From NCBI GenBank assembly GCA_977020255.1, contig CDROCS010004515.1, positions 124,001 through 188,000 of the forward strand: a stretch of 64,000 bases of DNA, read 5' to 3'. The DNA is from Obrimoposthia wandeli. Its lineage: Eukaryota. A program made the translations under genes and the position numbers. Position 1 is the stretch's first letter. Each line of letters opens with the position of its first letter. Positions 3,193 to 64,000 of this stretch are shown piece after piece. The notes beneath the pieces are model-generated. The model saw only the letters and a list, made by a program, of their open reading frames with translations. It had not been told where the DNA came from and made no database searches.

Positions 3193-5008
3193 TAAAGATA
3201 TTTTAAGATCTATATATTAATTTTGTATTTCTCATGTGATTTCTAATGGGAATTCTAAAGATATAATTGTCAAATTTAAAGCGTGCAATTTAAATGAAAA
3301 ATTTATAGCAAAATGTCAAGAATTCAATTTTGGGATCAACTCCTTAAATTTTGCACCAAAATCGACCATTAAAGCAGAAGTCCTGATTCCATTTTGAATT
3401 TCATCAATATTGAAACAACAGATTATTCTAGTTTCTAGAATATATATAATTTTTCATTAATTGATTGAAAAATATAGGTTCCACAATCCGGATAACCATA
3501 TAATTATTAGGTCACCAGATATCCGGTGTACTTTAAATATGTAACTAAAAACACTATGGCTACACTAAACGGCCACTTACATATACAGTATCAATAAATA
3601 ACCGTTAGAGAACTAGTGAGTAACATTCCCCAAAGAGAGCACACATATTATAAAACATTTAATATTATTGAAAAAATATTCAAAATCTTGTTAAAAAATT
3701 ATTGATAAATCATTGAAAAACTGCTGACTTGAAATATAAGGAATGAGGTTGTACTAATTATGTGTTGGTTTGAAAATCAAAACTTTTCAAGCAAATTGCA
3801 ATTTTTTGAAACAAACCATTGTTAAATTTTTTTTATTAAGATTGATTTAGTGTTATGTTTGTCACAGTGTTTTCTTTTTCGTTCCAGCAAGACTATCATC
3901 CAGACAAAATGGAAGAGTAACTGCGCGTGAAAAAGATCCCGTCTATGTCACTGCTGCACCGAGTGATGGCAGGAGCTGGAGGAAGACGAGAGAAGATACT
4001 GGATATAGTTATTATCGGTGTACTAGCAGCAAAAAGTAGGGAGAAATAATGCTGTCGGATTGTTGGCGTTATTATTCCAACCGTTTTATTTCTCTGACAG
4101 TTATTTCTGGCTTCATAGGAAATGCCACTGAAAAGTCAGAGATAACAAGTGACCTCCGTGATGATGGCCATGCTTCAGGTTCAAGGTGAATCAGTTAATA
4201 AGTTAGATTCAAAATTGTTTGAGGGTCTTCTACTGATCTTACAGTCATAATTATCTCTGCCTTTTTGGATGTTTATCCACTGCGAAGTCATAGATAATTT
4301 CACTGATCGACCGACTGAACAGCCAAGACAAGGAGAAACTATCAAGTATGTTGATCTGTGCAGTCTGACATTTACTGCCTGATTGAAGTAAATTTAAATT
4401 ACCATTTTTCCTAATTCGATTTTAATCAATATTTTTACTAATTAAGAACCTAATTATTATATCCCAAAAATGAAAATGTCCTCTTTGATTAACACAACAC
4501 ACACGTCTGATGAATATACTGAGTCTCCAGGCAAAATTTGAGCTTTAAAGTGCAATGGCACTTACTACTTTGAATTTAACTCATTTTCAAATACAGAGTT
4601 TTTATTAAAGATAGATGATTTTTTAAAGTAATTTTTATTGAAATTGCATATAAATGAAAAATAAAAATGTATTATATAGAATTTAGGAGTTATGGAGAGT
4701 TCACAGTATTAATGATAAGTTGATCTTTTTTCTTATTTATATTTCAATTTTTCAAATAATTTTTAAGTGTCCGAAAATTACAGAGTTGAGCCACGTGTGA
4801 ATTGATTTGTAATTATTTATATTCATATGATAATAAATTGTAATTAAAATTAATTTTATAATTTTTGGTTCTATATATATTTCAAATTACTTTTCGAAAT
4901 CTTTTGTGCATCAAATTGTAAGGTTATGTTTTTTTATTATACATGTACTTTTATTCAGTTACAGTTGAGAAATTGTTAGAAATAATTAATAGTAAAGAAA
5001 TAAATCTC

Positions 5009-6350: not shown

Positions 6351-9300
6351 GTCTAATGTAACAAACAGACAATATGCTTAATATTATTATGATAAGCAAC
6401 TTCCAGAAAGGGAAATCTTTAATTTTTTTCTCTCAAAACTGTCATAAAATATTAAAATTCTAATGTGACCAGAAATACGTTTATAAAGAAAAATATGAAC
6501 ATATTCAACATAATTACCTCAATTATCGTGGGTTTGTATTCGATTTCATGACGTATGCTTAGACACCAATAGTGGTCTTCTATTAGAATGGTGAGTTTCA
6601 ATTATAATAATTATGATGTGCATCTTTTTGACGAGTTAAAGAGGTATGTAAAGTAAAACGACATTTTATAAGGAATTTGGCACTGAATAAGTTTTCATTT
6701 GCAAACCTTAGGGTTTCTTTATGAATATACATTTGAATGAGAATACCTGCAATTGTCTGGCTTACCTTTGTTGGTCTTACATTACACTAGGTGTAATTTC
6801 AAAATAACGTAACGACAAATTTAACTTCATTTGATTTTTTTAGTATCTTAGGTAATGCCCAAAACTGATTAATGTACATGTTAAAACTGAAATTTTTGAT
6901 CCAAAGTCATCCTGAAAATAATTCTAGTCCCAAGAATTTCTACTTAGTCTGATAGGGTCGAAATCTTATATTTTTAGATGAGAAGTTAAATCTCAATGGG
7001 CTTGCTGTCTTTATTCATTATTGGCTTGAATTAAGAAAATATAATAAAGGTTTGGTGCGGAATTTTTTATTATGGTTGTCTAAATTTAGTTAAAATTATC
7101 ACAAGATTTAAGTGCAGAACCAAATTTTTTGAGGAATACTAGATTTTTCAACAGGATAACCATAATATCCAAACACCAAAAATCGCTCAAATGATTCATC
7201 TTTAATAATAGCAGAATTTTATGTATGTCCAAAATGTTTTATGGATATAAACATGACAAAATTAATATATTAGAAGATAAAATGTTTGTTGAAATGATAA
7301 ATGATGATTATAACTTGAGAATGTCTGGTATGTCAAGAACCTAAAACAGGTATGAGAGATTTAGTTTTTAAACCTTGTCTTTTGCATCCAGTTTCAAATC
7401 CGTATAAGTAACTTTAAAATTCTTATAAATCTAAAAAATGCGTAATTTCTAATAATACATAAAGTGATTATAATGATGATTCTATTAAATTTTAAAAAAT
7501 TAAATATACCTAACAGCAGTCAACATAGATTGGTAAAATTTACTAATATTCCAAAAAGTACATTTCGTTACCAAATGAAGATCCCGTGTAAATTTGAACA
7601 CTATGTTTATTATATTAAAAGTTATAATGGTATCATCGAGTAGATGAAATGGATATAAATAGGAGATTGTATTTAAAAAAGTCAAAATATAGAGTTAATT
7701 CTAGGTGTAGAGAAATCAAAAAACGAAATAATACCAATTATTTAACAAACAATATATTATTTCGAATTAAAATATTTTTTGGATTAGCGAGTGAGTTTGG
7801 AAGACTAAATGAGATACAAGTACTACTCAGAAAGAAACTGAATTGGTGGAGTGCGCCATATTGACATAATTTATTAGACTTGATTCTTCAAAAGATTTAT
7901 GAAACTAACTGATAAATCAATGGGTAAAACATTAGATGGTTAGATTGTGGATACATATCAATCAATGTATAATGATTTGAATTTCAAATTATTATTTAAA
8001 GTAGAAATTGCTTAAACATTGATATATTTTAATTGAGTATTATTTTCAAAAAGTTTATTTGCACGAAAATCATAAAGAATTTGATTACTTAAGTAAATAT
8101 TTCTTGAATAGCGAAGAACTTGTTTGTATTAGAAGAATTATTATTTTGGACAAAGTTTAGTGGTTGTATATAGAAATTATTGCACTTCGTTTATATATTT
8201 CGGTAGGGTTTGAATCATTATCTACAGAAAAACAGCTTATTCTCCAACAATTTTGTTTATTTCAGCAACGTTTTATAATTCACATTGGTAACATTATAAT
8301 AATATGATACAAGTTTTGGAACAAAAGGACGTCATTGAAGATTCTTTGGAAATACTTCAGAATCATATACCATTTGAATAGATTACATTATCAATGAACA
8401 ACTTTAAAAATGTAAATCTCTTTTATTTAAATAGAATGACGAAAATGCTTCATGAATACAGACGTACTTCATATCAAAACGTTCATATTTCAAATTTATA
8501 TTTAAACAAAAACACACAACAGACAGTTTATGTTTCTTCTTTTATTTTTGACCTTCGACTGAGGATATCATGTGATAAATCATTCAATCACTATTGTAAA
8601 CATACTAAAATCATTTAAAAATATTATAATTTAATATAGTATTTAAATATAGTTATATTTTATTTTAACCATCTCATACAAGATATATTCCCGACCGAGA
8701 AAAAGAATGACTCAGAATGAATTAGAAAGTCACGATTAAAACGTACAAAAATTATTATTTGAAAACTTTTTTAATCTTTGAATATACAATGAAACCTGAA
8801 TTTTCTGTGATTTTTAAACGACTCCCGTTATTGCAATTTAAACTTAATTGATTTGAATAGTATATTAATATAAACTAGATGAAATATATAACGCAAGTGC
8901 ACCTTATAAAATTTTAGTTAAAAATAGTTTCACAGCTTATTGTACATAATTATGGATTTCTTTAAGTTTTTTTAAATTTTTCTTTGTCATTATAAGTCAT
9001 TTTGATTAAAAATGTACCAATTTTAATCAATAAATGAATTATATGGTAATATTTTAGGTATGCATATATTTGTATTAGACAAAGTATAAAATTCCAAATC
9101 CAAACTGATTCTATTACATAATTACTTTTTAATTATTTTTAAAGTAGAGTTGTATTATAATAGTTTTTTAATATCAACATTATTAAATGAAATATTTGAT
9201 ATATAAAACGATTTAAAATTAATGGTAATGTTTGAGAAACTACTCTTTTCGTGAACTATATATGTTGGATACGATATCAAATTATATACTTTACCTTGAC

Positions 9301-50449: not shown

Positions 50450-51899
50450 AATTCTGTTTATTTTACATAATTCCTTCGAGCTTCTAACCTTTACCTCCTT
50501 TACTTTACTTAGCCACTCTATTGACCTGTAGCCAGAACTGATCTTTCTTGATCCTCCATTTCTCTCTTATGTGATTTACCAGTTCGTCATATGTGACGTC
50601 TTCATTTATCTCCAAATTGCTATCCTTTTCTCCCCAACCTAAGACTCTCACATTTATATTTTTATATTTATCCCCGTCTACAGACCTTATTAATAATGGT
50701 TTTTTTACGTGGTTTACCCTTTCCCTGTTTTCCTATAGTGCCTAGATTATCGTTAAAAATGTTTGAATCAATGTTGCATCTACCAATATCAATGCTACGT
50801 TTCTATAACTTCTTTCTGTTGTGACCAAAACTGATTAATCTTTATCTATAATAACTTAGCTGTGATGATTTTTAGGTCTAATTTTGTCATACTAAATCGT
50901 ATTTTATCTTATACTCCTTATTTTTTCAGTCTTTCACTGTAATTAATATACCTAACCTTAATGGTTTATAGTAGTTTATAGTGTCGGTACTAAACCAAAG
51001 AAACCTAAACCCCCCGGGGGGCTAGATTCCTTTGATTTAGTCCCAACATTGTAGTGCCTAGATTGTCGTTAAAAATGTCTGTATATAGTCATTTTCAGAC
51101 AGAATGTCGTTAAAATGTCTAAAAATTGTTTAAATTGGCTTAAAATGACTCAAAATGACTCAAGTTTTTTTCTACAACTCCATGTCAGGTCTGGTGTTGT
51201 ATGTAGGATTTTGAGACTTGACAAATCACACATACTACGCCAACGTTAATAGCCCCTCGCCGGGGGGTACCTTATACTGCAAAACCATTTTTGGCGTTGT
51301 ATGCGTGATTTCAAGACCATTTTCAAATATGGCGCTAAATATCTTGCCGTTTAAAACAAAAGTAGATTAAGTAGATTTTAAGTAGCCAAAGTCTCCCTTG
51401 CGGAGCCCCCTTAAGAGGAGAGCCCTGCAAAACCGGGCAGCACCTTTGGCAAAGATTATATTTTATATTACTTTTGTTTATAATAAACCTTTAAAGAATA
51501 ATAAAATCAATTAATTATTTATTCATATGATAAATAACATTAAAATAAAATAAATAAATTATTTATTCATGTGATACTTTGATGTTAATGATATCGAAAA
51601 TTTTCTTCTTTAAGGTTGGTGCGAAGAGCACATAACATATCCAAAGTACCTAGAGTCATAATGATGAAATGATTTTAAAACTAAAGTGTTTCGATTATAT
51701 AAAAACCTAACTTCAATATAATTGGTCGACTAATCAAAATAATCCTATATAATAAATAAATTGATTAAACACAAAAGTTGTATTAATATATACTAGTGAA
51801 TGAGTGTTTGTACAAATGATGACATTAAATAATAATAACAACAACAATAACAAAACTATATATCTTATTTAAAAATTATTAAGTTAAATTAAAATAAGC

Positions 51900-53610
51900 A
51901 AGGCTTTTATTCTTAATAACCCATCTTCTTTTATGGTCAAAACATTTTAAAGCAACTTTAGAGGTAAATGTTGTATGAAGCTGATGGTTAACCGATGCTA
52001 TACGTGACTAGTTAACACTTATAATTTCTTAATTTTCATAACAATTGAGGTAGTCTTGGTGTCTTAAGTTAGTTTGTTTTAAAGAAATACCCTTAGCCTT
52101 TAATTTATTTTGAAGTGATTAACATTTTGATTTTAAGAAAACCCATTCATTATAATCAGTACCCTCACTTTTATCTTTAAATTTTCTATTTACAGCTTTA
52201 AAGTTTTCCCAATACAAGGGATGTGTTTTAAGATAATTACTCGTATCTAAATACCCATCCTTAATCATTTCTTTGAGTAATTAATCCTTATTAATATTCA
52301 CACATTCAAGGAAAAAAGAATCTGTGTCCATATCTACAATTCTAATACTACAATTAAAAGTTTGTCTATACCGTTCAAACTCAACATATTATAATTGATA
52401 CATTCGTAATTTAGATAGATCAAGTACAGCTTGACCGATATATGAAGGCCGATCTAAATATATTTCCTTTTTCTGCTTAAAAACTAAATTTAAATCATCA
52501 TTTATTTGAGTATGACGTTTAAACCCAGGACTCTAAACTAATATTTCAAACCGTTTATCATTATTACATAATTTTATTTTAAGATTCTCAACCGTTTTAC
52601 CGTAAACGGAATTATTTTTTAATTTGTAAAACTCATATTCAAACTTATTAACACTAGTTGATCGCTTTTTTGAATTAAATTCTATATATTGTTTTAAAAC
52701 AGATTTTTGTCTAAACTGAATAGCCCTATGAATTTTTAAGATTTCAGCACCAAGAAAAACATAGAATTGTAGTAAACGGAAATGTATTACATAATGTTCT
52801 TTATCATTATGTGTTAAAATTAATTTAGGAGTTTTTGAGTTTGGTGGACACATCTTATGTGGTCCAATAGGTAAGTCATCAACATTTTCTCATGTATACG
52901 ATCCGGAATATGTAAATCTACTTCAACAAGAAAACCCCATACGGTTTTACTTAAATCCTTTTTACTTCCAACTAAATTCAAAATATAATCAAAATTATCA
53001 TGCACCAATTTAAATTCCATATGTGGTAAAGGTTGACTTAAAGCCCTTCTGTATACGTTATTCACACCTATATAGAGAAGTGATGTATTATCATTGGACT
53101 TACAATAATGTTTATTAACAAAATTCATACCTCCTCTAATACCTGCTTCAAATAGATTAAACATTTCTGGATCATGTAGCAATTCTACTTTATGTTTTAA
53201 TGATTTTACTGCCCTACACCAGCTAAGACTGGGAATACTAAAGAAATATGGAGCCTCAAGATTATCATCAGATCTAACTTTCAGTCTTAAAGCCTCAAAT
53301 ACATCATAAAGTAAGACGCATATATTCCATCATATAGTCTTTAATATTAGTGAAAGCTAGTTTTGTCAACATTGTATGAGCTAAATTATATTTATCATCT
53401 GTAACACTATCAGGAAATTCACATTTTGGAAGTATGTATATGTTTAACAGTCACATCAGGTTCTAAAATACTTTCAAAATCAGCGTAAACTACAAAAGGA
53501 CGTTGAACTAACTTTGACCAATCTGTGAATTCACAATATTTATTATCCGACATAGTGAATAAGATTGTAGTATCAGTATTAAAAATTCTAAAAATCTGTA
53601 TGATCATACT
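51900..53610 (-). pseudogene. Polinton/adintovirus protein-primed DNA polymerase B, decayed
   Basis: PFVVYADFES, GIRGG, SQPLP, EVDL, KIHRAIQF, YKLKNNSVYGKTVEN and DTDS motifs in order, with stops and frameshifts. Confidence 0.9.
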
Positions 53611-57751: not shown

Positions 57752-58340
57752 ATGGCAGTACCAGAACCACTTAATATACAAATGAATAACGAACAAATAA
57801 ACGAAGAACCTCAGATGGCAGGTTATAGATTAAACATACCATTAGACACTTTTAATGGCGATAAATCCTCGTTACCAGAATTCTTGAATATATACGATTC
57901 ATTCGCTAAGGCATTTGAATGGATAAACCCAGAGAAACTTAGAGTTTTTTCTGCATACCTAAAGGATACTGCTCTAACTATGTATAAAGGATTAACAGAT
58001 CTGCAAAAAGACACATCGGAACATTTAGTACAACACTTCCAAAATATGGTCTTAGAAACGCAGTCAAACCAGAATTGCATAAATAAATTTAAAATACGAG
58101 AACAACATGTAGGAGAACCCAAAAACATATTCGCAGTTGAATTACGACGACTAGCACTAAAATCTTTCCCCGAAAAAGAAGAATCCCAAAGCGGACGATT
58201 ACTTCTAGATCAGTTCTTACATGGATTGAATAAAAAATCGGAGATCACCCAGCACTACTGGAGGCAGAGAACTTTCAACAAGCTATAGATAAATATCAAC
58301 TAGTAAAAGCAAGACTAAATATGTTGCAGCAAACTGAGGT
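57752..58340 (+). mobile_element. Ty3/Gypsy gag (capsid) remnant
   Basis: DTFNGD...PEFL..Y...W...KL...YLKDTAL and ELRRLA..FP...LLDQFLHGL retrotransposon gag pattern; frameshifted and no pol follows. Confidence 0.8.
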
Positions 58341-58722: not shown

Positions 58723-58992
58723 AAATATGATTCTATATATGAGTTTCTAACGGATTTAAGTTCTTTGCAAATAAAACCTGAACCAAGTCATGTTATTATT
58801 TATCTTGAATACATTTTACCAAATCCCGAATGTATTGTTTGCTTGTCGGATATGATTTCCGTAGCATTTTTACCATGTGGACACTTAAATACATGCATTA
58901 AATGTTCAGATCACTTTATTACATGTCCATATTGCAAGACAATTATCATTAGAGGAGTAAGAAATATCAAATTTAATGGGATAAGCAATTGA
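58723..58992 (+). pseudogene. IAP-type C3HC4 RING finger, no start codon
   Basis: CIVC...VAFLPCGHLNTCIKC...CPYCK..I.GVR; upstream in-frame TAA at 58720. Confidence 0.75.
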
Positions 58993-59976
58993 CCAAAGAC
59001 ATCGTATGCAATGGTAATAAAAATAGATTTTCAAATAGTATATAAGAATCAGTTTATAATAAACCGAAGTGTTACTTCACAATATCAAATTTGTGAATAT
59101 TAATTATAGGGGAATGGTTGTAAGCGACATCCAACACTTACCATTTCGGACTTCGAAGCCGCACCAGTATCGACTCAAGTGTGTAGATTATTCTATTATA
59201 ATTTTCAAAACTGGTAACTTATTTTACATTTAAATTTTAATATAAATTAGGAACATGCTGAATAATAGGCTGTAAAGCAGTGTTAGATGAAAGCACTATT
59301 CCTTTCGATATTAAAATCGAAAGAATCCAATCAATCAGCGTCAATACTAATCTAGAAAAACCGAGATGAGTAAAAGCTGAGCAAGAGTATGGGATTGGAT
59401 GCAGTTTACGAACTAGAAAATTTCCCGAGACTTTGATATGCCAAATACAATCCACTATAAGTGAACATTTTCACAAGCGGGAAGGTGGTGATACTTGTTA
59501 AGTCACTATGTTATGAATATCTTATTGAATGTATTTTGTTTAATATACATCTTCACGCTTGTGTTATTTCTTCCCTGAACAAAGACATGAAATTCAAAAA
59601 GTTGCAAAAGGTCACAACATCATGTCTGCGTATTATTGGACAAGGTATAATAGGCAGGTATACTGTGTGGGTGTGTCCTGTAGGACAACGGAGGAGAAGG
59701 AGTATACAGTATCCTCTGTGGATTATCAGGCTCATATCGCCAGCCTCATGGTAAATAATAATAAGAAGGTCATCATTCGTTTGGTGGCAATTCTTAAAGT
59801 GGTTCAGCCCCAGCTCCATCACATGCAACCAATATCCATTCAATAACTGACCTTGGCCCATAAATTGTGCCAACTGACCCCTCTACAGTTTTCGAGCCTG
59901 TTGTTGAGTCATCCTCTCAACATACAAATAATGCATGGATGGATGACATCAGCCATGATGGCCGGAAAGAAAGGAC

Positions 59977-62751
59977 GTGAACGCAATAGAAAAGGCTGTG
60001 ACCACAGCCTGCTTACTGAGGAAACTGGATTGTGATCAAGCCCCTTGTTTCAAGCCAAGGAACCACGGCAAGAACAAGGAGAATATCGTAATTAACAAGC
60101 TATACGCCTTCTCAAAAAAAACAGCATTTGACCAAATCACGGAGATCCCTATCGACGAGACAACAGCATGCCCAAACGAGGACAACATACGGGGTTTCTT
60201 CACAAGCAAGAGCGCTGAACCAACCCCAATTGACTGGGATGCAGTTCCCGATAACCTTTTCCGAAAAGCACCAGAGACCTTTGAGATCAGCCACATCACT
60301 CCAAAGGAGGTAACTCGAGCGCTGAGAGCAGCACCTAGTAGTGCCCCAGGACCGGACCAAGTAACATATAGGGACATGTTACACAGCTTCGATAATGGTA
60401 ACAAACTGGCAAGCCTATACAATGCATGCATTGACGAACAACGGACTCCCGACTCTTGGCGAACCTTCAAGACCAAGTTCATCCCAAAACCTAGGAAACA
60501 GCGCTACGATGACATCACAGCTTGGCGACCTATCGCAGTCATGTCATGCGTTTACAAGATATTTGCGTCAATCATCACAAGACGGATGAGTGATTGGGCC
60601 TTGAAGAATAAAATACTGGATCCACGACAAAAATACCTTGGTGCTTACGAGGGGTGCTATGAGCACAACACGGTGATTAGCCTGATCACCTCGGAAGTAT
60701 TGCGAAAGAGGAACCAAGGCTGCGCCTACATCGCCTTCCTAGATCTGGCCGATGCCTTTGGGTCGGTACCAGTCTCTTTCATTTGGGGGATGCTGGAAAA
60801 AATTAACGTGGCCCCAGCCGCTATCAGACTGCTTGAAGATGTATATAAGCAGAATATGACCAACATTGTCTGAGGTGACAGGAAAATCAACCGGATCCCA
60901 ATAAAACGAGGAGTGCGACAAGGGTGTCCACTATCGATGCTCTTATTTAATATGAGCATCAATCCAGTAATAGAGGCCACAAACCAAAGCCATGGCTCAG
61001 GATACAGATTTGAAACAGGTGAAGAAATCCGGACCCTGACATACGCCGATGACCTTGCACTCATATCTAGCTCCAAAGAAGGACTCCAGGCCCTGATCAA
61101 TACCGCTGACAAGACTGCGAGTACACTACAGCTGACATTCCGGCCCAGCAAGTGTGGTGTCCTACGAATACTTTACAGGAAAGACAAACTAGCTGACAAT
61201 CTCATGTTGAGAGGAGAAAAAATACCAGAGGTAACTGCGGACACGCCATACCGATACCTTGGCAGCGACAGGACTGCAAACGCCAAGCAACATTGCGAGG
61301 AGCTGTTGGCTGAAGTGCTTCGACTGACCACGACAGTGGCAAAAAGCGAACTAAGACCGTATCAAAAGACTGACGCATACAATACCTTCATTCACTCAAA
61401 GCTGATATTTGTATTCAGACAGGGAAACCTGGTACACTCCCGCTTATCCTGCAACCGAACAGACGAAAGGGGCTTCGAAGGACTCCTAAGGAAAGTCATA
61501 AAACCAATCGCGGGACTAGACTTAGCCAACAGCCCTATCGTAGTTCTCTATGGGCACAAGGACCGTGGAGGTCTTGGGCTGACAAGGATTGAGGACGAAT
61601 ATAACATCCAGTCCATCATCCAGACGATAAAGATGGCAAATGCACGCGACAGGGACCTGAAGAACCTATTCAGGCGTGAGCTCACCGAACAATTGAAGTT
61701 TCCTAATCCACCAATGACCTTCTCCGAAGCAGTTCAGGGGTTTAATGAAGGGACCCTAGCCACTAACATGAAAGATACGGGACTTTGGACGCGGCTGTTC
61801 CACGCGGCCAAGAAATTCCAGAATGAGCTAAATATCAAACTAGAACTGATTGAGAAAGACCAAGCACTCAATCTTTTCATAACCAGCGACCATGGAGGCA
61901 GTTTTCTCATGCAGTTCAAGACCTACAAGGCCACAAGTAAGGCGATGCATAACATTGTGCAACTCAGCCAGAGTCACAAGGTTCTCGAAGACAAGCTAGC
62001 GAGTCCAATATATAAGAACGCCACATCCGACACAGACATTAACCGGGCCATCATGAAGGGCCGTCTGACGTACCGAGGGTGGTTCTTCATCCACCGCGCA
62101 AGGTGCGGGCGCATGAAGGTACGAGGCCCCAGGACTGATATGATCGCCCCATGCAGGAAGGGATGCCAGGAGCGAGAGTCGATGAGCCATGCAATCGTTG
62201 GTTGTAAGCTCATAGCAAAACTACGAATTCAAAGACACGACATGATCTGCCGGGAAACTGCAAGGGTCATGGAACTAAAATATCCAGAACAGGTAACTCA
62301 AGAGCTGACCCACTTATGTGTAGACGATAACGGAAACAGCTGCAGACCACGACCAGACATAACGATCGAGACTGACTATAAGGTGATGCTGATAGAGATC
62401 AAGATCCCGTTTGACTCTGACATGTCATTTGATCTGAGGCTCACCGAAACTATGTCCAAATACGCGGAGCTCGTTGAAATGCTAAAGACCCGCCACCCAG
62501 AAAAACTCGTGCAACTCTACGCGCTAAGGATCGGGACCCTCGGCTTCTGGCCTGAAATCAAAAACCGGATCTTTGCAAATGCTGGTTTTAAAGCATAGGA
62601 GATCAAGGATATCAAGATCCGACTAACCCTGAAAACCATCGAACATACAGCGGCCTCGTGGGCTAAATTCTCGAGTCATACAACTGGGATCCTGGATAAG
62701 TTGTCAGCCGAGGAGCTGGAGAAGATTGAGACCTGGACCTACGTAAAATAA
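59977..62751 (+). mobile_element. RT-RLE non-LTR retrotransposon (NeSL/R2/R4-like group), 5'-truncated, two in-frame stops
   Basis: SAPGPD, WRPIAV, GCYEH, FLDLADAFGSVP, GVRQGCPLS, YADD, YRYLG, CRKGC-x7-H-x4-C knuckle, RPDI..IEIKIPFD endonuclease. One frame throughout with TGA at 60871 and TAG at 62596; true stop TAA at 62749-62751. Confidence 0.95.
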
Positions 62752-62950
62752 AAAAAAAATTAAAAAAAAATCTTTAAAAAACAAAAACAAAAAAAAACAA
62801 AAAACAAAACAACAACAAGCAAACAACAACAACAACCAACAACCAACAACAACAACAACAACAACAACAACCAACAACCAACAAACAACAGCAGATTCGT
62901 GTGCCGAAAATGAGCCTTTTGATCCAACAAACAAAAACAAATAAAAAAAA
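62748..62950. repeat. Poly(A) grading into a degenerate (CAA)n tract
   Basis: Direct read. Confidence 0.85.
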
Positions 62951-62999
62951 TTTGTTTATTAATATCTGAATAAAAATAATAAGATCTGAAAACTTCGAC

Positions 63000-63530
63000 A
63001 TGGTCAGGAAGAGAAATAATGAAGCGCAGGTAAACAACGGGAGTAATTATAACCTCCTGCAGGGGGCCCAAGACGATATTTTTGGGTTACTGCGAAACTA
63101 TAATGTCAACGAGGAGTGCGCAAAGATACTGTCTGGTATTATCGACAAATTTGTAATGGCAAAGAACAACATTAGTCTAGAGGAAGCAGCAGACTCGTAT
63201 GCCAAAAAGAGACCTTTTATCAACAATAGAAAGGATTTGTTGGGAGATTTGAAAAGTGGTGGTCAGAGTTCGAAACTTCGACATGGACAGGAGGAGAAAT
63301 CGTACCCGAAAACCGACCTACGGTCGGTTACGGGTAATGGCCGAAAAGGTGGCCCCGCTACAATCGAGACTGCCGAGGGGCCCAAAACTGTACCCGGCGA
63401 TGACGTAAGAGTACTGAAAAAGTACGCGGACCTACTCAAAGTTCCAATGACGAAACCGAGACCCCAAGCAGTTACTGTTACTGCTACCGAGGACCAGCAG
63501 CATATTGAGACATGGACCTACGTAAAGTAG
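63000..63530 (+). CDS. Unknown intact 176-aa ORF sharing its C-terminus with the RT-RLE protein
   Basis: ATG to TAG, GC content similar to the retroelement, ends EDQQHIETWTYVK; followed by a short UTR and (TAAA)5 at 63589-63608. Confidence 0.6.
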   Translation: MVRKRNNEAQVNNGSNYNLLQGAQDDIFGLLRNYNVNEECAKILSGIIDKFVMAKNNISLEEAADSYAKKRPFINNRKDLLGDLKSGGQSSKLRHGQEEKSYPKTDLRSVTGNGRKGGPATIETAEGPKTVPGDDVRVLKKYADLLKVPMTKPRPQAVTVTATEDQQHIETWTYVK

Positions 63531-63619
63531 AAGAGGCCCCTATTTGGCCTTTGAGAAATTGATTGCGTTCACATTAATAAATGTTTGATAAATAAATAAA
63601 TAAATAAATCTAATATAAT

Positions 63620-64000
63620 ACTGATATCCCAGTTAATGTAACAGATGAAGAAATATTTAAAAATCCTTTTGTAGATGTAATTTATAGGAGCAAAAATGAG
63701 GGGACTCAGGTCAACTTAATTTTGCTTGAACAGAATAATAAATTCCATTATGCTGCAATTCCCAGTTTAGATCGTCTTCTAAATTTAGATAATGGAGCCT
63801 TACCGGTTAGGATAAGGTGTAAGTGGTGTCATAGATGTTTGAATGGATTCCGATCCGAGCTCTCTTACAGCAAACATCTGACATTATGTTCACTGAATCC
63901 TGATGACAATACGCTATATAGCATGCCTAAGGATAAGGATTTAAAATTCAGGGATTGGGCAAAATGCATACCCGTGGAATTCAGGGTGTATGCAGATTTT
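63620..64000 (+). pseudogene. Second Polinton pPolB, N-terminal region, runs off the window
   Basis: VNLILL...HY..IPSLDRLL...CHRCLNGF...H...C...MPKDKDLKFRDWAK...FRVYADF; one frameshift near 63700. Confidence 0.85.

What the first reader, a model, noticed from the sequence alone, without database searches (positions are those of the whole stretch)
62700..63610. RT-RLE protein and an unrelated downstream ORF end in the same peptide (IETWTYVK): possible retrotransposon-companion pair
Seen: the RT-RLE frame ends AEELEKIETWTYVK* and the 63000-63530 ORF ends TEDQQHIETWTYVK*. DNA at 62725-62747 and 63504-63526 is 22/23 identical, with codon-level similarity extending a few residues upstream. Only the second ORF is followed by a UTR and a (TAAA)5 tail. 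Known: non-autonomous retroelements often share 3' ends with their LINE. Inference: this is a protein-coding non-autonomous companion, a two-gene element with a shared C-terminal interaction motif, or a deletion derivative joining a 5' region to the 3' end. I do not recognise this arrangement.
Basis: partly seen in the sequence, partly recalled or inferred. Interest (0 to 1): 0.8.

Follow-up and report, generated by a model that had tools for sequence, protein, structure and literature searches.

The report
LINE carrying a copy of its own head
The "unrelated" 176-aa ORF is a second copy of this retrotransposon's own first 523 bases, re-joined to the last nine codons and 3' UTR of its reverse-transcriptase gene. 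The shared peptide is therefore duplicated DNA, not a companion gene or an interaction motif.

Summary
In detail: both ORFs end in IETWTYVK, the DNA core is 22/23 identical, and 38/46 bases match over the wider stretch.

The interpretation mostly fails.
- A full-length copy elsewhere in the genome (L053) shows that window 62980-63502 repeats the element's first 523 nt: 5' leader plus ORF1 codons 1-167.
- That repeat is fused to the last 9 codons and the 3' UTR of the RT-RLE ORF.
- This "head copy" (R') is part of one retrotransposing unit. It occurs at over 2,000 places, always downstream of the RT ORF. 5'-truncated copies keep it.
- About 750 copies keep an older joint with a TAA stop and the RT tail out of frame. 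About 1,430, including the window copy, have a 10-nt deletion that brings the tail into frame. The shared peptide is therefore a secondary accident.
- Substitutions in the ORF look neutral.
- In the 28 distinct copies examined I found no stand-alone copy.

What is there is an R2-like (RLE) LINE that has fixed an internally deleted copy of itself at its 3' end.

Side finding: the (ATAA)n tail always abuts one site inside a Polinton-type DNA polymerase B gene. Three insertions carry 545-705-bp target duplications.

Moderate interest; a new variant of a known kind.

The parts
59960..62748 (+). 5'-truncated ORF2 (RT + CCHC knuckle + restriction-like endonuclease) of the LINE. This copy is broken by stops at 60871-60873 and 62596-62598.
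   Evidence: Pfam RVT_1. Two stretches match solved R2 proteins: RT E 9e-15 and CCHC-RLE E 7.5e-10. Homology to other copies starts at 59960, while they continue about 1.7 kb further 5'.
62708..62753 (+). End of ORF2 (..LEKIETWTYVK*): first copy of the shared 46-nt segment.
62749..62890 (+). A-rich remnant of a first, internal 3' UTR (hairpin lost) followed by a length-variable (CAA)n microsatellite.
   Evidence: Copies read A-rich + 'gaagcctttaaaaa' here. 376 other copies keep an intact 3' UTR at this position. TRF.
62891..62979 (+). 89-nt spacer upstream of R'. It is an A/T-decayed relative of R positions about 199-286 and carries TATA-like runs just before the R start.
   Evidence: Alignment A1: about two thirds of aligned columns are identical, in blocks. 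Spacer plus R start occurs at 1150 places.
62980..63502 (+). R': a copy of the element's first 523 nt (5' leader + ORF1 codons 1-167).
   Evidence: L053:2337-2859 equals L053:7057-7579 at 99.6%. Window 62980-63502 equals L053:2337-2859 at 96.8%.
63000..63530 (+). 176-aa ORF: ORF1 residues 1-167 plus HIETWTYVK.
   Evidence: Intact in 19/28 copies, against 15/24 for an equally long piece of ORF2.
63487..63532 (+). Recombination joint and second copy of the ORF2 end. The ORF1-derived sequence ends at 63502 and ORF2 tail codons start at 63503. 63487-63502 is a stretch of partial similarity between the two parents.
   Evidence: The derived joint occurs at 1427 places and the ancestral joint (10 nt longer, TAA stop) at 747 places.
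63531..63587 (+). True 3' UTR with a 9-bp hairpin (63534-63550). In this copy the hairpin is damaged by two changes at 63544-63545.
   Evidence: Fold of the L053 equivalent: -22 kcal/mol, z -2.2. The majority of contigs read G at 63544/63545.
63588..63609 (+). (ATAA)n tail: the real 3' end of the element.
   Evidence: TRF. Repeat number varies 2-7 between copies. L010 ends here in a non-pPolB flank.
63610..64000 (+). Target DNA: a Polinton-type DNA polymerase B gene in sense orientation (about residues 202-326). It continues to 64170 beyond the window, where a palindromic insertion interrupts it.
   Evidence: tblastn and BLASTP to the intact 1090-aa paralogue, whose C-terminal 640 residues (L031:3081-5000) hit PF03175 at E 3e-34. 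Flanks of other copies are collinear with pPolB.

Best explanation
The window holds a 5'-truncated copy of a young, high-copy non-LTR retrotransposon of the R2-like (restriction-like endonuclease, RLE) type.

A full-length unit (5.35 kb in L053) reads, in order:
- R, the first 523 nt, followed by the rest of ORF1
- ORF2 (RT-CCHC-RLE)
- a remnant or an intact copy of a first 3' UTR
- (CAA)n and an 89-nt spacer
- R', a second copy of the first 523 nt
- the last 9 codons of ORF2
- the 3' UTR hairpin and an (ATAA)n tail

The 176-aa ORF is simply R' read from the ORF1 start codon into the duplicated ORF2 tail.

Shown: target-primed reverse transcription starts at the single terminal 3' UTR, so every copy, however 5'-truncated, carries R'.

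Inferred: the arrangement began as a head-to-tail joint between a full-length element and an internally deleted copy of it. That deleted copy resembles an R2 'SIDE' (5' end plus 3' end). The joint could have formed by an RT template jump. It could also have formed by a second insertion at the same target site followed by read-through transcription, or by DNA recombination. The composite then became the master copy.

Shown: a later 10-nt deletion at the ORF1/ORF2-tail joint removed a TAA stop and put the tail in frame. This created the shared peptide in about two thirds of copies.

Inferred: the small ORF has no demonstrated function.
For: - Identity of R' with the element's own head.
- One unit: in the 29 related loci, the RT end, spacer, R' and tail are contiguous in all but a few copies with deeper 5' truncations. 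5' truncation points vary (62097-62428 and others). Contig word depth rises from 5' to 3' along the element.
- Family-wide: spacer + R start at 1150 places; the two joints at 1427 + 747 places.
- Dimer origin: 376 copies keep an intact first 3' UTR directly after the ORF2 stop. In at least 23 of them an R start follows 180-320 nt later, and the ancestral joint then lies about 513 nt beyond that.
- Ancestral joint: the old copy in L025 retains 7 more ORF1 bases and 4 more ORF2-tail bases, with a TAA stop. Loose ends in the sample's contigs show the same joint.
- Neutral evolution: shared variants 7/22 synonymous and private 24/87, against about 0.23 expected. R' carries 22 shared variants, against 6 in an equal length of ORF2. 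ORF intactness is 19/28 versus 15/24 for the control.
- RLE LINE.
- Precedent for SIDEs and for template jumps by R2 RT: PMC3414825, PMC11371274.
Against: - No RNA data could be laid: the only runs holding the sequence are contigs of the source sample. Transcription or translation of the small ORF is untested.
- The neutral pattern among dead copies cannot exclude selection acting only on master copies.
- R and R' within one element are more alike (99.6% in L053) than R' copies of different loci (about 97%). That hints at homogenisation or an ongoing role for the repeat.
- Tandem arrays with a period of about 570 bp that contain the R start could be independently propagating short units. I could not read them.
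- The route by which the dimer formed is not resolved.
Confidence: 0.88

Rival explanations
1. Functional piggy-back module. The spacer acts as a promoter with its start site at 62980. Every copy, even a dead 5'-truncated one, would then make a roughly 630-nt RNA (R' + 3' UTR). That RNA would be mobilised in trans and would encode a truncated ORF1 N-terminal protein. The R/R' repeat might also work like the terminal redundancy of LTR elements, rebuilding promoter-bearing masters by homologous template jumps.
For: - Independent full-length insertions begin within 3 nt of the same base (L053, L052, C5762, five 'T|AGATCTG' sites). This fits a fixed RNA 5' end at 62980.
- The spacer upstream of R' is LINE-derived and has TATA-like runs 10-25 nt before that base.
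- R and R' stay near-identical within an element while lineages diverge.
- By coordinates, C6609 holds R copies 4229 and 4723 bp apart, the last two in spacer context.
- About 570-bp tandem arrays contain the R start.
Against: - No solo unit and no 'spacer-R-ORF1' arrangement appeared among the roughly 30 R copies I could read.
- There is no transcript evidence.
- Substitutions in the ORF look neutral.
- The ancestral form has a shorter ORF without the shared tail.
Confidence: 0.1
2. A true retrotransposon-companion pair: an independent non-autonomous coding element that landed next to its LINE. Alternatively, a two-gene element whose proteins share a C-terminal interaction peptide.
For: Only the shared peptide itself and the intact 176-aa frame in 19/28 copies.
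Against: - The ORF is the element's own ORF1 N-terminus.
- The arrangement is identical in all 28 distinct copies read, and its diagnostic junctions recur at more than 2,000 places genome-wide. No target DNA lies between the two parts.
- About 750 copies stop before the peptide.
- Intactness equals that of a control segment.
Confidence: 0.02

Closest known systems
R2 SIDEs (short internally deleted elements; Eickbush & Eickbush 2012, PMC3414825)
   Same: A unit made of the parent LINE's 5' end joined to its 3' end, depending on the parent's RT, which recognises the 3' UTR. The parent is an RLE-type, site-specific LINE.
   Different: Here the deleted unit is not a separate insertion. It is fused downstream of the full-length element, has become part of the master copy, and is copied in every retrotransposition. 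It keeps 167 ORF1 codons rather than a ribozyme; no Rfam ribozyme was found.
R2-group (RLE) site-specific non-LTR retrotransposons: R2, R4, NeSL/Utopia, HERO, CRE (PMC4640811)
   Same: RT followed by a CCHC knuckle and a PD-(D/E)XK endonuclease. The 3' junction is fixed and the 5' junctions and truncations vary. The target is a multicopy sequence.
   Different: The nearest protein in 5.8 billion is only 29% identical, and the clade is not assigned. There is a separate 560-aa ORF1 with no detectable homologue. The target is a Polinton pPolB gene, not an RNA gene or microsatellite. Target duplications reach 705 bp.
Penelope-like pLTRs, LTR terminal redundancy and mouse L1 5' monomers
   Same: A direct repeat of the element's head lies near its tail. 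The 5' region is built of repeated units (spacer+R start resembles R 199-324).
   Different: The resemblance is one of layout only. The RT is R2-like with an RLE, not GIY-YIG. R' is subterminal, with 107 nt of tail following it. No evidence shows that the repeat is used in replication.
R9 of bdelloid rotifers (Gladyshev & Arkhipova 2009, cited in PMC5035012)
   Same: An RLE LINE that makes an unusually long target-site duplication.
   Different: Here it is 545-705 bp in three loci.

Membership tests
RLE-type (R2-group) non-LTR retrotransposon | Reverse transcriptase domain of the LINE type | tested here: met
   PF00078 E 3.5e-15. Matches R2 protein 9nl2_A residues 532-811, E 9e-15.
RLE-type (R2-group) non-LTR retrotransposon | C-terminal CCHC knuckle plus PD-(D/E)XK restriction-like endonuclease | tested here: met
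   Residues 448-617 align to R2 residues 934-1099 (E 7.5e-10), including C..C..H..C and the PD...E.K motif.
RLE-type (R2-group) non-LTR retrotransposon | TPRT signature: constant 3' end, variable 5' truncation | tested here: met
   depth gradient.
RLE-type (R2-group) non-LTR retrotransposon | Insertion at one specific target sequence | tested here: met
   The tail abuts C|AAATATAATACTG of pPolB in all but one copy read. An empty site sits in L053:1585-1680. One non-pPolB insertion (L010) lies at a look-alike core.
SIDE-like non-autonomous derivative | Consists of the parent's 5' end joined to the parent's 3' end | tested here: met
SIDE-like non-autonomous derivative | Propagates as separate insertions with its own 5' junctions | tested here: inconclusive
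   None among the roughly 30 R copies read.
LINE plus companion (SINE-like partner sharing only the 3' end) | Body unrelated to the LINE; independent insertions with their own target duplications | tested here: not met
   The body is the LINE's own first 523 nt. It always lies inside the LINE unit.
Two-gene element with a shared C-terminal interaction motif | Motif conserved across subfamilies and under purifying selection | tested here: not met
   747 copies carry a stop before the motif. Substitutions look neutral.

The most novel reading that the evidence does not exclude
The head repeat and its spacer are a working device, not debris. The device would be a promoter-bearing mini-element parked at the one position that TPRT always copies. 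Every insertion, even a truncated one, would then seed a mobilisable short RNA and an ORF1 N-terminal fragment. Homologous R/R' template jumps would regenerate promoter-bearing masters. The result would be an LTR-like solution to promoter carriage, evolved within a non-LTR, R2-like element. That element also specialises on Polinton polymerase genes and makes roughly 700-bp target duplications.
Probability: 0.12. Interest if true: 0.75.

Novelty: new variant of a known kind. Interest (0 to 1): 0.4.

Why it matters
For the finding as posed, the answer is deflationary. The shared peptide is duplicated DNA brought into frame by a 10-nt deletion, so there is no new protein-protein pairing to chase.

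The element behind it still has value for transposon biology.
- It shows an internally deleted derivative captured at the 3' end of its parent and fixed in a family of over 2,000 copies.
- It adds a Polinton/Maverick polymerase gene to the list of targets of site-specific RLE LINEs.
- Its 545-705-bp target duplications, if made at insertion, imply two nicks very far apart. That bears on the poorly understood second half of LINE integration.

Tried and rejected
- The 176-aa ORF and ORF1 gave no family or homologue: Pfam, 5.8-billion-protein search with ORF1, ESM Atlas features.
- AlphaFold2 on ORF1 residues 1-345 as a single sequence gave pLDDT 33, which is unusable. No fold search was run.
- Rfam at E<=1 on the head and tail regions found nothing, so no known 5' ribozyme.
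- Sequencing runs: only four runs of one sample hold the sequence, all as contigs. They give no strand, start or expression data.
- From then on, no more genome letters could be fetched. Type-A copies, the C6609 array and the 570-bp arrays were judged from coordinates only.
- A recurrent loose end upstream of 62982 in the contigs proved to be a single genomic locus, C5762.
- '3' transduction of pPolB carried with the LINE' was rejected. The two flanking pPolB copies within a locus are 98.2-99.7% identical, against 91.8% between loci.
- 'One insertion amplified with its host element' was rejected. At least 10 different 5' junctions exist, including target duplications that deletions cannot produce. 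LINE bodies are also younger (95.4%) than their pPolB flanks (91.5%).

Full report
**Observation.** The two ORFs do end in the same eight residues.
- ORF2, the RT-RLE frame, ends AEELEKIETWTYVK* at 62748.
- The 63000-63530 ORF ends TEDQQHIETWTYVK*.
- The DNA is 22/23 identical at 62725-62747 versus 63504-63526, and 38/46 over 62708-62753 versus 63487-63532. Twenty shuffles gave no comparable pair.
- Only the second ORF is followed by a structured UTR and an (ATAA)5.5 tail at 63588-63609.

**The element is a high-copy repeat and one unit.**
- The genome is a 1.35-Gb eukaryote assembly. The stretch 62890-63620 has thousands of candidates there, and the 40 scored were 95-98% identical.
- In the 29 related loci fetched, homology runs unbroken from the RT ORF through the microsatellite, the small ORF and the tail. 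5' truncation points vary: 62097, 62127, 62152, 62190, 62217, 62425, 62428 and others.
- Contig word depth rises from about 9k at 59900 to about 90k at 62400.
- This is the signature of target-primed reverse transcription from a single 3' end.
- The window copy is itself truncated at 59960, and other copies continue about 1.7 kb further 5'. It has stops at 60871 and 62596.

**What the small ORF is.**
- A full-length copy (L053, 5347 bp at L053:2337-7683) has a 560-aa ORF1 whose first residues are those of the 176-aa ORF.
- Self-comparison shows L053:2337-2859 equals L053:7057-7579 at 99.6% over 523 nt. Window 62980-63502 matches the L053 head at 96.8%. The protein comparison gives 159/174 identical, E 3e-116.
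- So 62980-63502, called R' here, is a second copy of the element's first 523 nt: leader plus ORF1 codons 1-167.
- At 63502/63503 it joins the last nine codons of ORF2, the 3' UTR and the tail. The 16 nt before the joint are a patch of partial similarity between the two parents.
- ORF1 has no Pfam family, no homologue and no usable model.
- ORF2 matches solved R2 proteins in both the RT and the CCHC-RLE region. Its nearest database relative is 29% identical.

**How widespread it is, and how the shared peptide arose.**
- Spacer plus R start occurs at 1150 places.
- An older copy in L025 (about 89% identical) keeps a joint 10 nt longer. It retains seven more ORF1 bases and four more ORF2-tail bases. 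It reads ...QQQLY followed by TAA, with the ORF2 tail out of frame. The sample's contigs show the same variant.
- Genome-wide, the long joint occurs 747 times and the short, in-frame joint 1427 times.
- The shared peptide is therefore a derived feature of one subfamily, made by a 10-nt deletion.

**Origin as a head-to-tail dimer.**
- In 376 copies the ORF2 stop is followed directly by an intact 3' UTR.
- By coordinates, in at least 23 of them an R start follows 180-320 nt later, and the long joint lies about 513 nt after that. Examples are C30, C75, C322, C333 and C435.
- In the window's subfamily that first UTR has decayed to an A-rich stretch retaining 'gaagcctttaaaaa'. Its 9-bp hairpin is lost.
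- The simplest history is a full element followed by an internally deleted copy, the composite then becoming the master.
- Internally deleted R2 derivatives (SIDEs) and template jumps by R2 RT are documented (PMC3414825, PMC11371274). I cannot tell whether a template jump, a second insertion at the same site with read-through, or DNA recombination made the joint.
- The 89-nt spacer before R' is itself an A/T-decayed relative of R positions 199-286. The 5' region is therefore built of repeated units.

**No sign of selection on the small ORF.**
- It is intact in 19/28 copies, against 15/24 for an equal length of ORF2.
- Shared variants are 7/22 synonymous and private variants 24/87, near the roughly 0.23 expected.
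- R' carries 22 shared variants, against 6 in an equal length of ORF2.
- No stand-alone R'+3'UTR unit appeared among the roughly 30 R copies I could read.

**Target and long duplications (beyond the original finding).**
- Past the tail, homology among copies continues into a DNA polymerase B gene in sense orientation, at about residue 205.
- An intact 1090-aa paralogue lies just past the window end, with an A32-type ATPase and an rve+chromo integrase beside it. Its C-terminal 640 residues (L031:3081-5000) hit PF03175 at E 3e-34. This is a Polinton/Maverick.
- The 3' junction is always (ATAA)2-7 followed by C|AAATATAATACTG. An empty site is present in L053:1585-1680. The one non-pPolB insertion (L010) sits at a look-alike core.
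- 5' junctions differ. The pPolB endpoint ranges from -467 to about +1300 relative to the tail site.
- In L053, L052 and L003 the LINE is flanked by direct pPolB repeats of 705, 705 and 545 bp. These repeats are 99.7, 98.2 and 99.5% identical within a locus. Downstream pPolB flanks of different loci average 91.8%.
- That pattern fits duplications made at independent insertions. It does not fit 3' transduction or one amplified event.
- The pPolB flank is 4-7 times deeper than the LINE tail in the sample's contigs, so most target copies are unoccupied.

**Limits.**
Subfamily structure, arrays and possible solos rest on coordinates and pattern counts.
- The only runs holding the sequence are contigs of the source sample, so nothing is known about transcripts.
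- Earlier notes of this scan on this window concern other places and did not bear on this finding.

**Verdict.** The ORF is the element's own ORF1 head, duplicated and fused to its ORF2 tail. The element itself is an unusual RLE LINE: it has fixed a SIDE-like unit, it targets a Polinton polymerase gene, and it makes very long target duplications. That justifies moderate interest.

Noticed in passing
window 63610-64000 and L031:1610-2170; L052, L053, L054 flanks: The LINE is site-specific for one position (about residue 205) of a multicopy Polinton-type DNA polymerase B gene, in sense orientation. The target is 4-7 times more abundant than the LINE tail in the sample's contigs.
   Followed up: partly
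L053:1632-2336 = 7684-8388; L052 (reverse strand) 811-1515 = 7071-7775; L003:90-634 = 2228-2772: Direct repeats of target pPolB (705, 705 and 545 bp) flank the LINE. They are 98.2-99.7% identical within a locus, against 91.8% between loci. These look like exceptionally long target-site duplications made at insertion.
   Followed up: partly
G000:C1316:937553-943214 and C1549:359937-369346 (coordinates only): Tandem arrays with a period of about 570 bp. Each unit contains the R start 'GAGATCTGAAAACTTCGACATGG'. They could be a satellite derived from the LINE head or tandem short units. The sequence could not be fetched.
   Followed up: no
G000:C6609:37151-46565 (coordinates only): pPolB is followed by three R copies spaced 4229 and 4723 bp apart, the last two in spacer context. 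This may be an R-body-R-body-R tandem of full-length units.
   Followed up: no
L053:2793-3295 = 3294-3796; L052 (reverse strand) 1968-2469 = 2468-2969: ORF1 contains a 501-nt (167-aa) tandem duplication. Its two units are 98.6-99.8% identical within an element but 95.6% identical between elements. R and R' behave likewise, which hints at concerted evolution of repeats within master copies.
   Followed up: partly
L031:2171-2700 (just past the window end, window-equivalent 64171-64700): A palindromic MITE-like insertion interrupts the pPolB target at 64170. It is followed by roughly 60-bp tandem repeats.
   Followed up: no
L031:3078-9700 (window-equivalent 65078-71700): A Polinton/Maverick segment: an intact 1090-aa pPolB with an endonuclease VII-like insert (minus strand), a TBP-like ORF, an A32-type ATPase and an rve+chromo integrase.
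   Followed up: partly
window 51894-53583 (-), 57752-58288 (+), 58765-58992 (+), 59461-59754 (+): Other mobile-element debris lies upstream of the LINE: a pPolB fragment on the minus strand, a gag-like ORF, a RING-finger (IAP-like) ORF and a TBP-like fragment. The window copy's 5' flank is not pPolB.
   Followed up: no
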